Below, piece by piece: positions 12,458 to 63,394 of a DNA stretch of 64,000 nucleotides. The notes below the pieces were generated by a model. That model had not been told where the DNA came from and made no database searches. It saw only the letters and a program-made list of their open reading frames with translations. This DNA is from Euprymna scolopes (lineage: Eukaryota), in assembly GCA_053919585.1 (NCBI GenBank), contig CM132798.1. One strand, written 5' to 3'. The position numbers and the translations under genes were made by a program. Positions within the stretch are counted from its first letter, which is position 1. The number at the start of each line of letters is the position of its first letter.

Positions 12458-13090
12458 TTCCTATTTACAATGCCTCCCCACGGGACAGAGTTAGACACCA
12501 GGGTCGTTTTTTAACGTGGAGAAAAGGAACAAAAATAAAAACTGTCTCAGTCGTGAAGGATTTCTCCTCCACTGACACAGAACAAGAAATTGAAGTGCAG
12601 CATCTGAAGAACAGATACTACACTTTGAGGTATTTATTTGCTCCCCCACTGAGCAAATTCGGCACAAGGCCGATTTTTAAAGTGAGGAGTGAAGGGGAAA
12701 TGAGGACTAACTCCCCGGGGAGTAGGAGAGCTGGATAGTGACAATTGGTATGAAGGGTTGCCCCTACATTGACCAAGGTCTTATATGTGGGGTTTCCCCC
12801 ACATATGGTCTTTGCTTGCAGTATCTGCCGGAACAGATACTACACTTTGAGATATTAAATCTTTTATTCATGTTAAAAATACAGTCAAAATCAACGATGA
12901 ACAAAAAACTTAGGCACATGGCCAACTCAAAAGGGGGGATTGTGGGGGTCGTTGGTCATCCTTGTCACTCCAGGACTAAACAAAGTCAAAAGTTTCTCCC
13001 AGCTAGTATCTTCTTTCACCATAATACCGCATTCGCCCTTTCATATTGGGGGACGTCCTACTTAACTCCCAATTTTTAAAACATTTTTTA
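12458..13090 (-). mobile_element. U2-headed SINE (12458-12629) with nested insertions in its U2 head
   Basis: Homologous to 13182-13380; gaacagatactacactttgag duplicated at 12609-12629 and 12831-12851 around a ~200-bp SINE-like insert; 12852-13090 matches 20640-20875. Confidence 0.8.
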
Positions 13091-13181
13091 TGTGCGTGTG
13101 TTGAAGCAAATTATCATAAATACTGTAACTAATTCTATTATCGTTCATTTAACCTGCTTTTGTAAAAATCCTCGCGTGTTA

Positions 13182-13380
13182 ATAACTTCCATGGCCTTCG
13201 GGACAAGATCAAAGTGTAGTATCTTTTCTTCAGATGCTGCACTTCAATTTCTTGTTCTCTGTCAGTGGAGGAGAAATCCTTCACAACTGAGACAATTTTT
13301 ATTTTTGTTCCTTTTCTCCACGTTAAAAAATGACCCTGGTGTCTAACTCTGTCCCGTGGGGAGGCATTGTAAATAGGAAC
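13182..13380 (+). mobile_element. U2 snRNA-headed SINE-like element
   Basis: ggccttcgggacaagatcaaagtgtagtatct matches the U2 5' end; shared body and tail; aacttcca on both flanks (TSD). Confidence 0.85.
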
Positions 13381-13729
13381 TTCCAAAAACTTCCAATCTT
13401 TAATGCACGAGAATTTGCTACTAATTTTAAACCCAGTTTAAATGCTTCCAACTTCCGTTCAAATTTTGAAATGTGACAAAGTAATTTTCTTTTCTTATTA
13501 AATTATTAACAAAATATTTAAATGGATGACTTGTTTACAAAGAAATCGACACGCATTCTGACGTATTTGATTTCCTAATCAAATTATTATTTTTTAAAAT
13601 AATATTTATGAAGCTTATTTTATTTCATGCGATTGCATTTTTATTTCAGTAAATAATCGATTGAAAAAATATATGCGAATCACATAGATATGAGAAACAT
13701 ACGTCAACTTCACATATATATATATATAA

Positions 13730-13911
13730 TGATTACTTCATTTAATCACATAAATTAATATACAAAAGTATAAATTAATGCGTAAACTTTAAGTATTTAC
13801 TTCAACAGTGCTCGATACGTACGTAGAGCTAGGTAGTAAGTTAGAAAATATATATGGCAATTAAGTTATTCTGTGTAGCTTAATTGCCATATATATTTTC
13901 TAACTTACTAC
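13730..13911. mobile_element. Collapsed copy of the palindromic hammerhead element (ribozyme core deleted)
   Basis: Homologous to 38990-39264; inverted repeat 13833-13911. Confidence 0.75.
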
Positions 13912-14093
13912 TATATATATATATATTCTGGCATGACACTGTAGCGAAGACTCTACATGTCTGTATAAATAAATATTAATATGAATAGTTCTATTTATTG
14001 TTGAACACTATTATATAAAACCGGTAGATGTTCTCTGGATTTTTATACTGCAAATATATTGTAAACCTGGACTACTATATAATTCGGGCACTT

Positions 14094-60339: not shown

Positions 60340-60389
<50 letters not shown>

Positions 60390-60766
60390 TAGTATGGGTT
60401 CCCGGCGTTGCCCGGGTATTTGGAGGTATATGTTGAGCAAAAAAAAAAAAGTGGTCAATTTTTTTAAATTTTACCCCTATGGCCCCTTAAAATTTATTGT
60501 TTTGGGCTCAAATTAAGTTATTTAGTTAGATTAATGTCCAAGGAATCTATATCTAAAATTTCAAGTGTTTAGACCCAAAATTGTCGGAGGAGTTTGATAG
60601 AGTTCTCAAAGATCAAATCGTTGAACTTTGACCCCTTAACAGCCAAATTTCTGGCCGACAACCGATCACATAGATTTTCCCAAATCTCAGTAACCTGTAT
60701 ATCAAATTTCTAGTCTGTAGACTAAAAATTAACAGAGTTATTGCATAGGGAAATGTACACACACAG
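58064..60766 (-). mobile_element. Head-to-tail array of four non-autonomous Helitrons (58064-58935, 58950-59862, 59868-60261, 60389-gap)
   Basis: Each begins on + with (C)TAG plus a cccggcgttgcccggg-type hairpin; the first three end cacttttatagA; two long and two short forms. Confidence 0.85.
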
Positions 60767-62206
60767 NNNNNNNNNNNNNNNNNNNNNNNNNNNNNNNNNN
60801 NNNNNNNNNNNNNNNNNNNNNNNNNNNNNNNNNNNNNNNNNNNNNNNNNNNNNNNNNNNNNNNNNNNNNNNNNNNNNNNNNNNNNNNNNNNNNNNNNNNN
60901 NNNNNNAAATGTCTCTACATCATATTTCAAAACATAGACTTTCTTGATGAGGGCAATCTTTTGAGAAGAAACGTTCACCAGGATGAATAAGAAATGAAGT
61001 TTTCATAAAAGCATTTTAATATTGTTTAGAATGTTTCCTGTGAATAGAAATTTAGAAAAAAAACAAGTACTTGGAAATATCTTGACTTAAAAATTTTTTT
61101 ATAAAAATTACTTACAAAAACCGTGTATACTATAAAATACATAAAGAAATTAGTGTTGGAACAATAAATTGGAATCGGAAAGATCGGAACGTTTTGGGCT
61201 ATTGTCATTAGTATCAGAATCAGAAAAAATTGAACCGGATTTCTAATGCCAAAAACTATTCTTTTACTCATTTTTTTTTTTAAACACTAAATTGCCTATT
61301 TCTGTTTTTCTGGCACAGGTGAAAAATATAAATGAAAATCTTACAATGAGTTTATCAAAATCTTCGATGTAATAGATAGACATTATATTTGCGTTTAAAA
61401 GTAGATGAGGATGCTTTTATTTTATTTATTTTTTTACTGTTATTTTCACTCCAAACAAGGCAGAGTGCCACTTCGACATAACAGGCTAATATTTGGGATA
61501 AAATTTACAAGTATACAATGTAGGGAGTTGAGCAGCAAAATGTCTGTTCACATTACATTTGAACTTCTGCATGTCAGTATAGTCAGGGAAGCATGGATTC
61601 GGGAGGGAATTCTAAAATTTAACAGTTTGAGGGAAAAATCTATAGAATGAATCTATGAATAGAAGGCATTCTAGCAGCTAAGGATCTTTTCAGTATAGAG
61701 GTAGGATTTTGCTGGTGTGAAGGTATCTACTTCATGGGAGTACAAGAGCACATTTAGATAGTGTATCATTAGACAAAAAAAAAAAAAAAAGAAATCAAAT
61801 TTTACTTTTTTTTAGGCAATTTTAGAATCTGAATGGATAACTGTATCAGAATTAGAAATTGTATTGGAATTGGTGAAAAATATTGGAATCATCCCATCAT
61901 TAATAGACATATTTGATTTTGTGATTATGGTATAAGGAATAGATGGAGAGTATTGGGAGTTTTTTCTTAAAAGTCTGAAGTTATATTGATGTGTTTAAAA
62001 AAGAAAAACAATTGAAAGACATTTTTTATTAATTAAATTTAAACAGCTTTGTGCTTTTCCATCGATAGGTTTCTCCTGAGATTTTCTCTGTTGGCAGACA
62101 CTAATATCATAGATTCTTTCGATTGTTGCATATCCTCGACAATAAATTTGACTTCTTTTTTTTTTTTCATGTTTCATTTTCAAAAGTATGATCATGACTA
62201 GGTGTT

Positions 62207-62429
62207 CCTATTTACTTGCTTCCCCACGAGGGAAGAGTTGTACACAAAGTTGGTTTTTAATGTGGAGAAAATCCAACTTCCCTAAAAGGGGCACTCTGGA
62301 TAGTAATAAAAATAAAAATTGCCTCAATCTAGAAACATTTCCCCTCTACTGATTGAGGTCAGAAAAGGTGAAGCATAGTATCAGAACAGATACTACACTT
62401 TGCTCCTAGTCAGAAGGCCAAGGAAACAT
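62207..62429 (-). mobile_element. Full-length U2 snRNA-headed SINE-like element with TSD
   Basis: Reverse complement atgtttccttggccttctgactaggagcaaagtgtagtatctgttct head; atcatgactag(g/t)tgtt at 62191-62206 and 62428-62443. Confidence 0.9.
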
Positions 62430-63394
62430 CATGACTAGTTGTTACTTCTGGATTATCTACATAAGTGAAACAAATTTTCTTAACACCTTAAAATCAGCAA
62501 AACCTTTTATGATGTATGGTTTAGCTAAAATTCGAGCTGAAATTGTAATATTCATCTTTATTAATCTTTATTATACCACGCAGGTAAGCTTACAAATCAG
62601 TTGTTTAGCTTTCATATGCGATTCTGGTTAACCCTAAAATCATACCCTTCATCTTTGCCAATTCTGTTTTCCCATTATTTTATACTCGTAACAGAAGGAA
62701 ACTAAAGCTTTTTACCGTAACAAGGGCTGAAGAATAAAGCAGTTTTCGTAACAACTTAAAATTTCTGCAAAATTTTTAAACAAAGCATTTTTGTAGATTT
62801 CCTCTGATGCTCAAGAAATGTTACGAGGAATGTTAAATGATTTACCTTCTGAGATGATCATAAAAAAATGATCTCAACTGAAAATCATGTGATAAATATA
62901 TAAATCCTGCAGCTGTGTAATAGAGCCTTGCTTCCTTTTATAATTCATGATGTGGCAGACGTACATGCCTTCGAGACCTATTCAGTATGGATTCTGCTAT
63001 TTATATAAATATATTAAAAAAAATTAAGTGTATTTTTTAAACCCAGATTTTATGTGGTTAAAATTGTTAAAAAGTAAAAAAGCATCAGTTACTGAAAAAC
63101 GAGTGTTTCAGAATTTTTTAGATGAGGATTGATAATTTTTATCCTGTGATAAAAAAAAAAAAAAACCCAAACACCTAACTGTTTTCCTATGCATGATGAG
63201 TGATTGAGAGCATTACTTAACATAAGCAAACATTTAAAGTGCAAAATAGTTTTCTGCAAAATATTCTCACAGACTCTGAGGAAAGATTTTTTTAATCCAT
63301 TCTTAAAAACAAAAACTGTATGGAAAGCCATCACTTTATCATAAGGTTCTTAGAATTATAAGCAAGTAGTTGCTTGAATTATTTGATTTATTCA

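What the first reader, a model, noticed from the sequence alone, without database searches (positions are those of the whole stretch)
12458..62443. A SINE family headed by the 5' end of U2 snRNA (SINEU-like) in an invertebrate: six copies in 64 kb
Seen: six ~200-225 bp homologous units (12458, 13182, 14298, 16342, 20468, 62207). Their 5' ~45 nt match metazoan U2 (..GGCC-loop-GGCYAAGATCAAAGTGTAGTATCTGTTCT), followed by a shared non-U2 body and tail. Five have flanking direct repeats of 6-16 bp, the clearest being atcatgactag(g/t)tgtt at 62191/62428, which places the 5' boundary at the U2 start. There are two subfamilies, differing by a diagnostic internal deletion. Known: snRNA-headed SINEs are rare, and I know them mainly as crocodilian SINEU. 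U2 is a Pol II transcript with an external promoter, so the head supplies no internal promoter. Inference: an independently evolved, high-copy U2-headed retroposon whose mode of transcription is unexplained.
Basis: partly seen in the sequence, partly recalled or inferred. Interest (0 to 1): 0.9.

Follow-up and report, generated by a model that had tools for sequence, protein, structure and literature searches.

The report
U2-headed SINE tied to U2-homing LINEs
The six repeats are copies of a very abundant mollusc retroposon whose first 47 letters come from U2 snRNA, and the same genome holds full-length LINEs that home into U2 sequence and carry the identical 47-letter leader, which suggests where such snRNA "heads" come from.

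Summary
Six homologous units lie at the stated places. Their 5' part is the genome's own U2 snRNA, nt about 1-47; body and tail are not U2. There are two subfamilies. Four units are free-standing copies with target-site duplications of 6-16 bp. The other two (12458, 20468) lack U2 nt 1-26 and are the last module of head-to-tail composites.

Genome-wide, the head/body junction occurs at least 40,900 times, against 0 for the control pattern. The copies end in ...TAAATAGG without poly(A), and their 5' ends are ragged.

The new point is this. The U2 gene array holds full-length Tx1-like LINEs preceded by exactly U2 nt 1-47. One LINE family is followed by U2 nt 22 onward in 15 of 16 copies. Another sits before ATCGCTTCT (U2 nt 1) or ATCTGTTCT (the Keno/Utopia site), and nt 47 lies 9 nt past that site. 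The head is therefore most likely the upstream target flank of a U2-homing LINE, captured by co-transcription and now shared by LINEs and SINEs.

Not shown: which LINE moves subfamilies A and B, and how the SINE is transcribed. No master copy behind a U2 promoter was found.

It is a SINEU-like family, a new variant of a known kind. This scan noted the same family on other DNA of this genome. Repbase and Dfam could not be checked.

The parts
12460..12628 (-). SINE subfamily A unit without U2 nt 1-26 (U2 nt 27-47, body, tail ending TAAATAGG). It is the last module of a composite.
   Evidence: 98.8% identical to the A consensus
12629..12830 (-). Module X, a 202-bp non-autonomous unit. It starts CGGCAGATACTGCA and ends ...GGCCTTGTGCCGAATTT...GCAAATAAATACC. 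U2 nt 27-46/47 lies on both sides.
   Evidence: The same X-A composite is present at L053, L070 and L074; at L066 the X tail abuts the U2 fragment in the same way, but the sequence downstream is not the A body.
12831..12850 (-). U2 nt 27-46 fragment (TCAAAGTGTAGTATCTGTTC), the upstream copy of the duplicated U2 target of X
12851..13097 (-). 247-bp module resembling the 3' UTR end of the U2-array LINEs (motif GGCCATGTGCCTAAGTT). It ends ...TTTAATATC directly before U2 nt 27.
   Evidence: (z about 9 against the LINE1 and LINE2 3' ends)
13192..13377 (+). Free-standing SINE subfamily A copy, 5'-truncated to U2 nt about 10. Target-site duplication AACTTCCA at 13184-13191 and 13378-13385.
   Evidence: 98.4% identical to the A consensus
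14306..14522 (+). Free-standing SINE subfamily B copy. Weak 6-bp repeat AACTTT at 14300-14305 and 14523-14528.
   Evidence: (RF00004 42.3 bits)
16345..16558 (-). Free-standing SINE subfamily B copy. 12-bp duplication with 1 mismatch at 16333-16344 and 16559-16570.
20470..20638 (-). SINE subfamily A unit starting at U2 nt 27, the last module of a two-module composite
20639..20884 (-). Second copy of the LINE-3'-UTR-like module (about 93% identical to 12851-13097), abutting U2 nt 27 of the A unit
62207..62427 (-). Free-standing, older SINE subfamily B copy (15% from the consensus) reaching U2 nt about 3. 16-bp duplication with 1 mismatch at 62191-62206 and 62428-62443.

Best explanation
The units are copies of a LINE-dependent, non-coding retroposon family of a mollusc genome (5.9 Gb). 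A SINE RNA that begins with the first 47 nt of the species' own U2 snRNA is reverse-transcribed at a nicked target. This leaves duplications of 9-19 bp, ragged 5' ends and no poly(A).

The U2 piece is not a promoter-bearing gene fragment picked up at random. It is the common 5' leader of a group of Tx1-like (Keno-like) LINEs that home into U2 sequence. These LINEs cut next to ATCTGTTCT (U2 nt 39-47) or the similar ATCGCTTCT (nt 1-9), or at nt 22-27. The leader ends at nt 47, which is one 9-bp stagger past the nt 38/39 cut.

Inferred, not shown: an ancestor sitting in a U2 gene was transcribed from the U2 promoter, so its RNA began with U2 nt 1-47. That leader has since been inherited by LINEs, by short U2-homing modules (X and the 247-bp module) and by SINE subfamilies A and B.

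The tens of thousands of dispersed heads now serve as extra landing sites. This is why units pile up head-to-tail, as at 12460-13097 and 20470-20884.

Also inferred: A and B are moved by a LINE of this clade with relaxed target choice (targets start with AAC), and active source copies are read by Pol II from an upstream promoter or from a LINE-type 5' promoter.
For: Family and retroposition:
- The head/body junction occurs 12,536 times for B and 28,346 times for A at up to 3 mismatches, on both strands of all large contigs; the control pattern gives 0.
- Duplications of 9 bp or more flank 21 of 65 copies, against 0 of 65 with swapped flanks.
- 46 of 65 3' flanks start with AAC.
- The window's A copies are 98-99% identical to their consensus.

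Head:
- The head matches the genome's own U2 and stops at nt 47.
- Copies whose head reaches nt 1 (ATCGCTTCTTGGCC...) exist.
- 6,193 copies have a head identical to present-day U2 nt 15-47.

LINEs:
- Four gaps in the U2 array hold 7.1-7.6 kb elements. Their ORF2 has APE, RT and zf-RVT domains and their ORF1 a CCHC knuckle. Each is preceded by exactly U2 nt 1-47 and then CAGTGC.
- The best reviewed structural match of ORF2 is Xenopus Tx1 (E 2e-59, 24% identity), ahead of L1.
- The LINE1 leader junction is found at 41 sites on 20 or more chromosomes.
- 15 of 16 LINE1 3' ends are followed by U2 nt 22 onward.
- Of 88 LINE2 3' ends, 17 precede U2 nt 1 and 17 precede ATCTGTTCT followed by a SINE-A, X or LINE body (counted by hand).

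Nesting: 8 of 30 young A copies have another module ending at nt 22-27 of their head.

Tail: B against X gives z 20.7. X against LINE1 shares the motif CCTTGTGCCTAATTT, z 7.6. The ends TAAATAGG and TAAATACC are similar.

RNA: poly(A) reads of one run cover the LINE1 5' UTR and continue into U2 nt 34-47 with no start pile-up at the junction.
Against: - Direct similarity of the A and B tails to the LINE1 and LINE2 3' ends is not significant; the link runs only through module X.
- A and B insert at dispersed AAC sites, unlike the U2-specific LINE1 and LINE2. An A tail followed by U2 nt 27 onward occurs only 19 times, including one tandem array. Their real partner was not found.
- No A-type body sits behind the upstream sequence of the U2 array (0 hits), so no master copy under a U2 promoter is shown.
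- In the array, LINE2 is followed by U2 nt 1, not nt 39. The classic arrangement, U2 1-47 / LINE / U2 39-199 in a genuine gene, was not seen.
- The LINE clade was judged by fold and domains, not by a tree.
Confidence: 0.7

Rival explanations
1. The head was added by template switching of a LINE reverse transcriptase onto free U2 snRNA, as proposed for crocodilian SINEU. It has nothing to do with U2-gene targeting.
For: This is Kojima's model for SINEU (PMC4494074, read). Several head variants exist, some identical to present-day U2, which could mean repeated additions.
Against: A switch onto mature U2 should copy it from an internal point to its 5' end, with varied 3' limits. Here LINE1, LINE2, A and B all stop at nt 47, and the U2 fragment upstream of X stops at nt 46. 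That point lies 9 nt past a cut site these LINEs use.
Confidence: 0.15
2. The leader plus the shared start CAG(A)TGC... is an internal Pol II promoter borrowed from the LINE 5' end, as in an LP-SINE. Every full-length copy could then be transcribed without an outside promoter.
For: Mollusc LP-SINEs with LINE-derived heads are described (PMC4758252). LINE1 copies at 41 dispersed sites keep the leader. LINE1 RNA includes leader nt 34-47. A, X and the LINEs share a CAG(A)T.CTGC-like start.
Against: No promoter assay was done. snRNA genes have no known internal promoter (PMC4494074). Most copies are 5'-truncated, and the subfamily structure fits a few master copies.
Confidence: 0.25
3. The whole unit is a degenerate or internally deleted U2 gene or retropseudogene that keeps snRNA architecture (Sm site and 3' stem-loops), like SINEU-3.
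For: cmscan aligns the unit at 14298-14522 to the full U2 model at 42.3 bits, with a T-run at the Sm position and a 3' hairpin.
Against: The score is below the gathering score. The 3' part is no more similar to the genome's own U2 than shuffles are (93 of 500). The tail is homologous to module X and, through it, to LINE 3' UTRs.
Confidence: 0.04
4. A Pol III SINE with a hidden tRNA- or 5S-like promoter.
For: None found. Most SINEs are of this kind.
Against: ARAGORN finds no tRNA in the window. The only Rfam matches to the units, and only below their gathering scores, are to U2. The body contains two runs of five T (ATTTTTATTTTTG), which act as Pol III terminators by established knowledge.
Confidence: 0.02

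Closest known systems
SINEU (crocodilian SINEs with U1/U2 snRNA-derived heads; Kojima 2015, PMC4494074)
   Same: Both are short non-coding retroposons with a 5' head from U2. Both have internal T-runs, no known promoter, subfamilies with different head versions, and LINEs of the Tx1 group in the same genome that carry the same snRNA head.
   Different: This family is in a mollusc, not a reptile. It has no poly(A) tail and ends in a LINE-like tail, TAAATAGG. Its head always stops at U2 nt 47. The head-bearing LINEs here home into U2 sequence, not into a Mariner transposon. Copy number is in the tens of thousands and the copies are young. Sequence relatedness to SINEU could not be tested.
Keno (Tx1-clade, APE-type LINE specific for U2 snRNA genes) and Utopia (RLE-type, same site), PMC4640811
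   Same: The array LINEs have an APE, RT and C-terminal zinc-finger ORF2 closest to Tx1. They sit in U2 genes, and one family is found directly before (A)TCTGTTCT, the stretch given as the Keno/Utopia target.
   Different: Other sites are also used: U2 nt 1 in the gene array, and nt 22-27 for LINE1 and the short modules. The LINEs carry a U2 leader to non-U2 loci. Keno has been reported from fish, frogs, lancelet and hydra, not from molluscs. No phylogeny was made here.
LP-SINEs of molluscs (SINE heads taken from a LINE 5' end; PMC4758252)
   Same: The SINE head is the 5' end of LINEs of the same genome and may act as a Pol II leader or promoter. These are also mollusc SINEs with a tail lacking poly(A).
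   Different: Here the shared LINE 5' end is itself a piece of U2 snRNA. There is no sequence relation to the roughly 70-bp LP head.
R2/R1-type co-transcription of site-specific LINEs with their target gene
   Same: The element depends on the target gene's promoter, and upstream target sequence on the RNA can help 5' joining at the target.
   Different: This is shown for rRNA genes. Here it is only inferred for U2, and the leader has become a heritable part of elements that also insert elsewhere.

Membership tests
SINEU | Short (<500 bp) non-coding, LINE-mobilised retroposon present in many copies | tested here: met
   Units are 170-225 bp. There are at least 40,900 junctions. Duplications of 9-19 bp flank 21 of 65 copies against 0 of 65 controls.
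SINEU | 5' head derived from U1 or U2 snRNA | tested here: met
   35 of 40 identical to the genome's own U2 nt 11-50. Copies with full heads start at nt 1. RF00004 gives 42.3 bits, below the gathering score of 46.
SINEU | 3' poly(A) tail (stated for all SINEU groups) | tested here: not met
   Copies end ...GTAAATAGG, followed directly by the duplicated target.
SINEU | Sequence relationship to the crocodilian SINEU-1, -2 and -3 consensus sequences | not testable with these tools
SINEU | Tx1-group LINEs in the same genome carrying the same snRNA head | tested here: met
   LINE1 and LINE2 are preceded by U2 nt 1-47. The best reviewed fold match is Tx1, P14381.
Keno (U2-specific Tx1-clade LINE) | APE-type endonuclease plus RT; Tx1 clade | tested here: inconclusive
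   Pfam finds Exo_endo_phos, RVT_1 and zf-RVT, and ORF1 has a CCHC knuckle. Tx1 is the top Swiss-Prot fold hit at 24% identity, against 18-19% for L1. No tree with named Keno sequences was made.
Keno (U2-specific Tx1-clade LINE) | Inserted in U2 snRNA genes | tested here: met
   Four insertions lie in the 764-bp U2 array. 15 of 16 LINE1 and 34 of 88 LINE2 3' ends abut U2 sequence.
Keno (U2-specific Tx1-clade LINE) | 3' junction at the fixed site, with the downstream flank starting TCTGTTCT | tested here: inconclusive
   Met for 17 of 88 LINE2 ends (...TAAATACC then ATCTGTTCT). Another 17 abut U2 nt 1, and LINE1 abuts nt 22.
Genuine U2 snRNA gene (Rfam RF00004) | Full-length match at or above the gathering score, with Sm site and 3' stem-loops | tested here: not met
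   The units score 16.9-42.3 bits, below 46. The real genes score 161-179 bits.

The most novel reading that the evidence does not exclude
The 47-nt U2 leader is a working module, not a relic. It lets LINE and SINE cDNAs rejoin U2 genes seamlessly, so that source copies are driven by the snRNA-type Pol II promoter. By scattering tens of thousands of U2 heads, the SINE has in turn created a genome-wide set of landing pads that allowed a U2-gene-specific LINE to leave its narrow niche. This would give a general origin for snRNA-headed SINEs, the crocodilian ones included: co-transcription at a Keno-type target rather than template switching.
Probability: 0.3. Interest if true: 0.8.

Novelty: new variant of a known kind. 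Interest (0 to 1): 0.65.

Why it matters
snRNA-headed SINEs are known in the open literature only from crocodilians, and how they obtained their heads and how they are transcribed was left as an open question (PMC4494074). This genome has a young family with tens of thousands of copies. It also has intact, transcribed LINEs that carry the same leader and home into U2 sequence. That makes the question testable: map RNA 5' ends, look for source copies in U2 genes, and test the leader in retrotransposition assays.

The locus also shows a site-specific LINE, its short parasites and their target sequence evolving together. The SINE spreads the LINE's target around the genome, and head-to-tail arrays result.

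For genome annotation, these heads will be mistaken for U2 pseudogenes.

Tried and rejected
- Whole-unit U2 ancestry: rejected by the shuffle test.
- tRNA or Pol III head: none found.
- Master copy in the U2 array: three pattern searches found nothing. They tried a B head with an intact U2 5' end, an A head behind the array's upstream sequence, and a genuine head plus A body behind that sequence.
- Direct tail match of A or B to LINE1 or LINE2: not significant.
- Vertebrate-type U2 pattern without the extra A: 0 hits. This showed that the genome's U2 is of the protostome type.
- Relatives elsewhere: two scans of JGI metagenome contigs for the SINE and LINE junctions found nothing.
- ORF2 relatives at 51-62% amino-acid identity in other assemblies: these lie in tandem arrays or beside microsatellite-like DNA, without U2.
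- Failed or blocked steps:
  - Searches of the genome with the Rfam U2 family and with the ORF2 protein failed on the server.
  - After no further genome DNA could be fetched, so flanks of dispersed LINE copies and of full-length SINE copies were read only through patterns.
- A 9-nt repeat 220 bp upstream of the 20470 composite was judged to be chance.
- The U2-core-like 17-mer at 43421 shows no family body.
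Full report
**Observation**

The 62207 copy finds the five other units by BLASTN, and all six align end to end. The U2 core 17-mer occurs 8 times in the window, against 0.01 expected. Rfam's U2 model hits four units at 16.9-42.3 bits, all below the gathering score of 46. 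At gathering level the window holds only two 5S-like matches. No assembly gap touches a unit.

**The genome's own U2**

The window lies on contig 16 of a 5.9-Gb assembly. Public runs labelled mollusc or invertebrate metagenome hold the window's DNA. From genome size and the number of large contigs I guess a decapodiform cephalopod, but this is inference.

A vertebrate-type U2 pattern gives no hit. The protostome type, with GATCAAAGTG, gives 1,201 hits, most of them in a 764-bp tandem array on contig 9. These genes score 161-179 bits for RF00004.

The SINE consensus matches this U2 at 35 of 40 positions over nt 11-50, including the extra A. After about nt 50 the similarity is no better than shuffles (93 of 500). 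The head is therefore U2 and the rest is not.

**Family size, age and mode of insertion**

- The head/body junction of subfamily B occurs 12,536 times and that of A 28,346 times, at up to 3 mismatches. Both strands and all large contigs are represented, and the control pattern gives 0.
- A sampled set of B copies lies 7.5% (K2P) from its consensus, and young A copies about 3%. The window's three A units are 98-99% identical to the A consensus.
- Of 65 copies examined, 21 have duplications of 9-19 bp, against none with swapped flanks.
- Copies end ...GTAAATAGG with no poly(A). 46 of 65 downstream flanks, and 14 of 21 confirmed duplications, start with AAC.
- The 5' ends are ragged, from 15 nt upstream of U2 nt 1 to nt 24. 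About 80 A copies within 3 mismatches have heads starting ATCGCTTCT, that is U2 nt 1.
- 6,193 copies carry a head identical to present-day U2 nt 15-47. Several head versions therefore exist.

**The six units**

Four are free-standing: 13192-13377 (A), 14306-14522 (B), 16345-16558 (B) and 62207-62427 (B). Their duplications are 8, 6 (weak), 12 and 16 bp.

The other two are not truncated insertions. At 12460-13097 the minus strand reads, in order:
- a 247-bp module;
- U2 nt 27-46;
- a 202-bp module X;
- U2 nt 27-47;
- the A body and tail.

At 20470-20884 the same 247-bp module directly precedes U2 nt 27 of an A unit.

Among 30 young A copies elsewhere, 8 have another module ending at U2 nt 22-27 of their head. 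The modules are X, the 247-bp module, a B-like unit with an X tail, or a LINE 3' end.

**LINEs in the U2 array**

Four irregular spacings in the array hold 7.1-7.6 kb insertions. The one in L043, here called LINE1, has an 880-aa ORF1 with a CCHC knuckle and a 1,145-aa ORF2 with Exo_endo_phos, RVT_1 and zf-RVT domains. A model of ORF2 (pLDDT 78) matches Xenopus Tx1 best among reviewed proteins: E 2e-59 and 24% identity, against 18-19% for L1 ORF2.

All four insertions are preceded by exactly U2 nt 1-47 and then CAGTGC. LINE1 is followed by U2 from nt 22. The three LINE2-type copies are followed by U2 from nt 1. The SINE head ends at the same nucleotide, nt 47.

**The leader travels with the LINE, and the LINEs home to U2 sequence**

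- The LINE1 leader/5'-UTR junction occurs at 41 sites on 20 or more chromosomes. These include contigs 7 and 8, where the listing of exact matches to the intact-U2 29-mer shows none.
- The ORF2 DNA has 40 best hits at 97-100% identity on many chromosomes, some of them 7.6 kb apart in tandem.
- The leader of two of the three LINE2-type array copies carries GGTCAAG where the array genes have GGCTAAG, and the same variant recurs at six sites in all.
- Of 16 copies with the exact LINE1 3' end, 15 are followed by TAAGATCAAAGTGT, that is U2 nt 22 onward, on nine contigs.
- Of 88 copies with the exact LINE2 3' end, by my hand count:
  - 17 precede ATCGCTTCTCGGCC (U2 nt 1);
  - 17 precede ATCTGTTCT (U2 nt 39-47), then a SINE-A body (9), a LINE 5' end (3) or an X start (5);
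  - 24 lie in roughly 7-kb tandem LINE arrays;
  - the rest precede other DNA, often beginning ATC.

The two U2 sites share the 9-mer ATC[GT][CG]TTCT. The second is the stretch that Kojima and Jurka give as the common Keno/Utopia target (PMC4640811).

**Reading**

A cut at nt 38/39 with a 9-bp stagger puts the upstream flank's end at nt 47. An element sitting there and read from the U2 promoter would yield an RNA that begins with U2 nt 1-47. That is the leader now found on LINE1, LINE2, A and B, and X has the same leader ending one base earlier (nt 46). This step is inference. I did not find the classic U2 1-47 / element / U2 39-199 arrangement in a genuine gene.

Poly(A) RNA reads of one run cover the LINE1 5' UTR at a depth of about 15. 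They continue into U2 nt 34-47 with no pile-up of starts at the junction, and their strand fits sense transcripts.

**Tail**

SINE-B and X are clearly homologous (z 20.7). X shares CCTTGTGCCTAATTT with the LINE1 3' UTR (z 7.6). The 247-bp module matches the 3' ends of both LINEs (z about 9). A and B against the LINEs directly are not significant.

This motif occurs three times in the window, against 0 expected. It is also kept, as GGCCATGTGCC, in a related LINE of another assembly. The ends TAAATAGG (SINE), TAAATACC (X, LINE2) and a shared start CAG(A)T.CTGC point the same way.

**What is not settled**

A and B are dispersed elements. An A tail followed by U2 nt 27 onward occurs only 19 times, ten of them in one 170-bp tandem array. 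Their targets start with AAC, not with U2 sequence. Their actual partner LINE is therefore unidentified.

No A body lies behind the array's upstream sequence, and no B head with an intact U2 5' end was found. How the SINE is transcribed therefore remains open. The candidates are a few masters behind U2-type or other promoters (one copy has a 5' extension), or a LINE-type internal promoter as proposed for mollusc LP-SINEs (PMC4758252). Pol III is unlikely, given two T5 runs and no tRNA- or 5S-like head.

**Comparison and novelty**

SINEU was reported only from crocodilians. It has poly(A) tails, Tx1-Mar partners of which some carry U1 or U2 heads, and an open question about transcription (PMC4494074). 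A full-text search found no report of SINEU in molluscs or any other invertebrate. The known cephalopod SINEs are tRNA-headed Ceph-SINEs. Repbase and Dfam could not be consulted.

First readers of this scan noted the same family on several other pieces of this genome. One follow-up agent independently called it a U2-headed SINE array with a Keno-type partner.

I rate it a new variant of a known kind. It is of clear interest to transposon specialists because it links snRNA heads to U2-targeting LINEs and makes the transcription question testable.

Noticed in passing
window 3561-3678 (+) and 39744-39859 (+): Two AT-rich, degenerate 5S rRNA-like sequences above Rfam's gathering score (48 and 45.7 bits). 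Their downstream sequence differs. They may be 5S pseudogenes or heads of 5S-derived SINEs.
   Followed up: partly
window 13832-13914: A near-perfect 33-bp inverted repeat with a 7-nt loop, which draws sub-threshold plant and insect miRNA models. It could be a MITE-like hairpin. It lies between two SINE copies.
   Followed up: no
window 43421-43437 (+): A 17-mer like the U2 core (2 mismatches) followed by GTTCTGTTG, with no recognisable family body. It may be chance or a relic of another U2-leader module.
   Followed up: partly
G000 contig 23, 114260060-114261447: SINE-A units repeated head-to-tail every 170 bp, at least 9 times. This is a small satellite built from the SINE through its U2 fragment.
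   Followed up: no
G000 contigs 10, 19, 38 and 41 (e.g. contig 19, 152706164-152785011): LINE2-type 3' ends recur every 7.0 kb or so, each followed by AACAGCTTG.... These are long tandem arrays of a related LINE without an evident U2 leader.
   Followed up: no
L080 (ENA ERZ25071366) and an ERZ21867824 contig: LINEs with 58-62% ORF2 identity in other assemblies also stand in head-to-tail arrays. They keep the 3' motif GGCCATGTGCC and a 5' start CAGTATACTG, with no U2 at the joints.
   Followed up: partly
L078 (Tara Oceans marine metagenome contig): A relative with 51% ORF2 identity has (ACAT)n runs in its 5' region, which may indicate a microsatellite-targeting member of the same clade.
   Followed up: no
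L047 (G000 contig 9, 168898000-168900100): One U2 array unit is cut short at unit position 552 and followed by about 110 bp of other sequence before the next unit.
   Followed up: no
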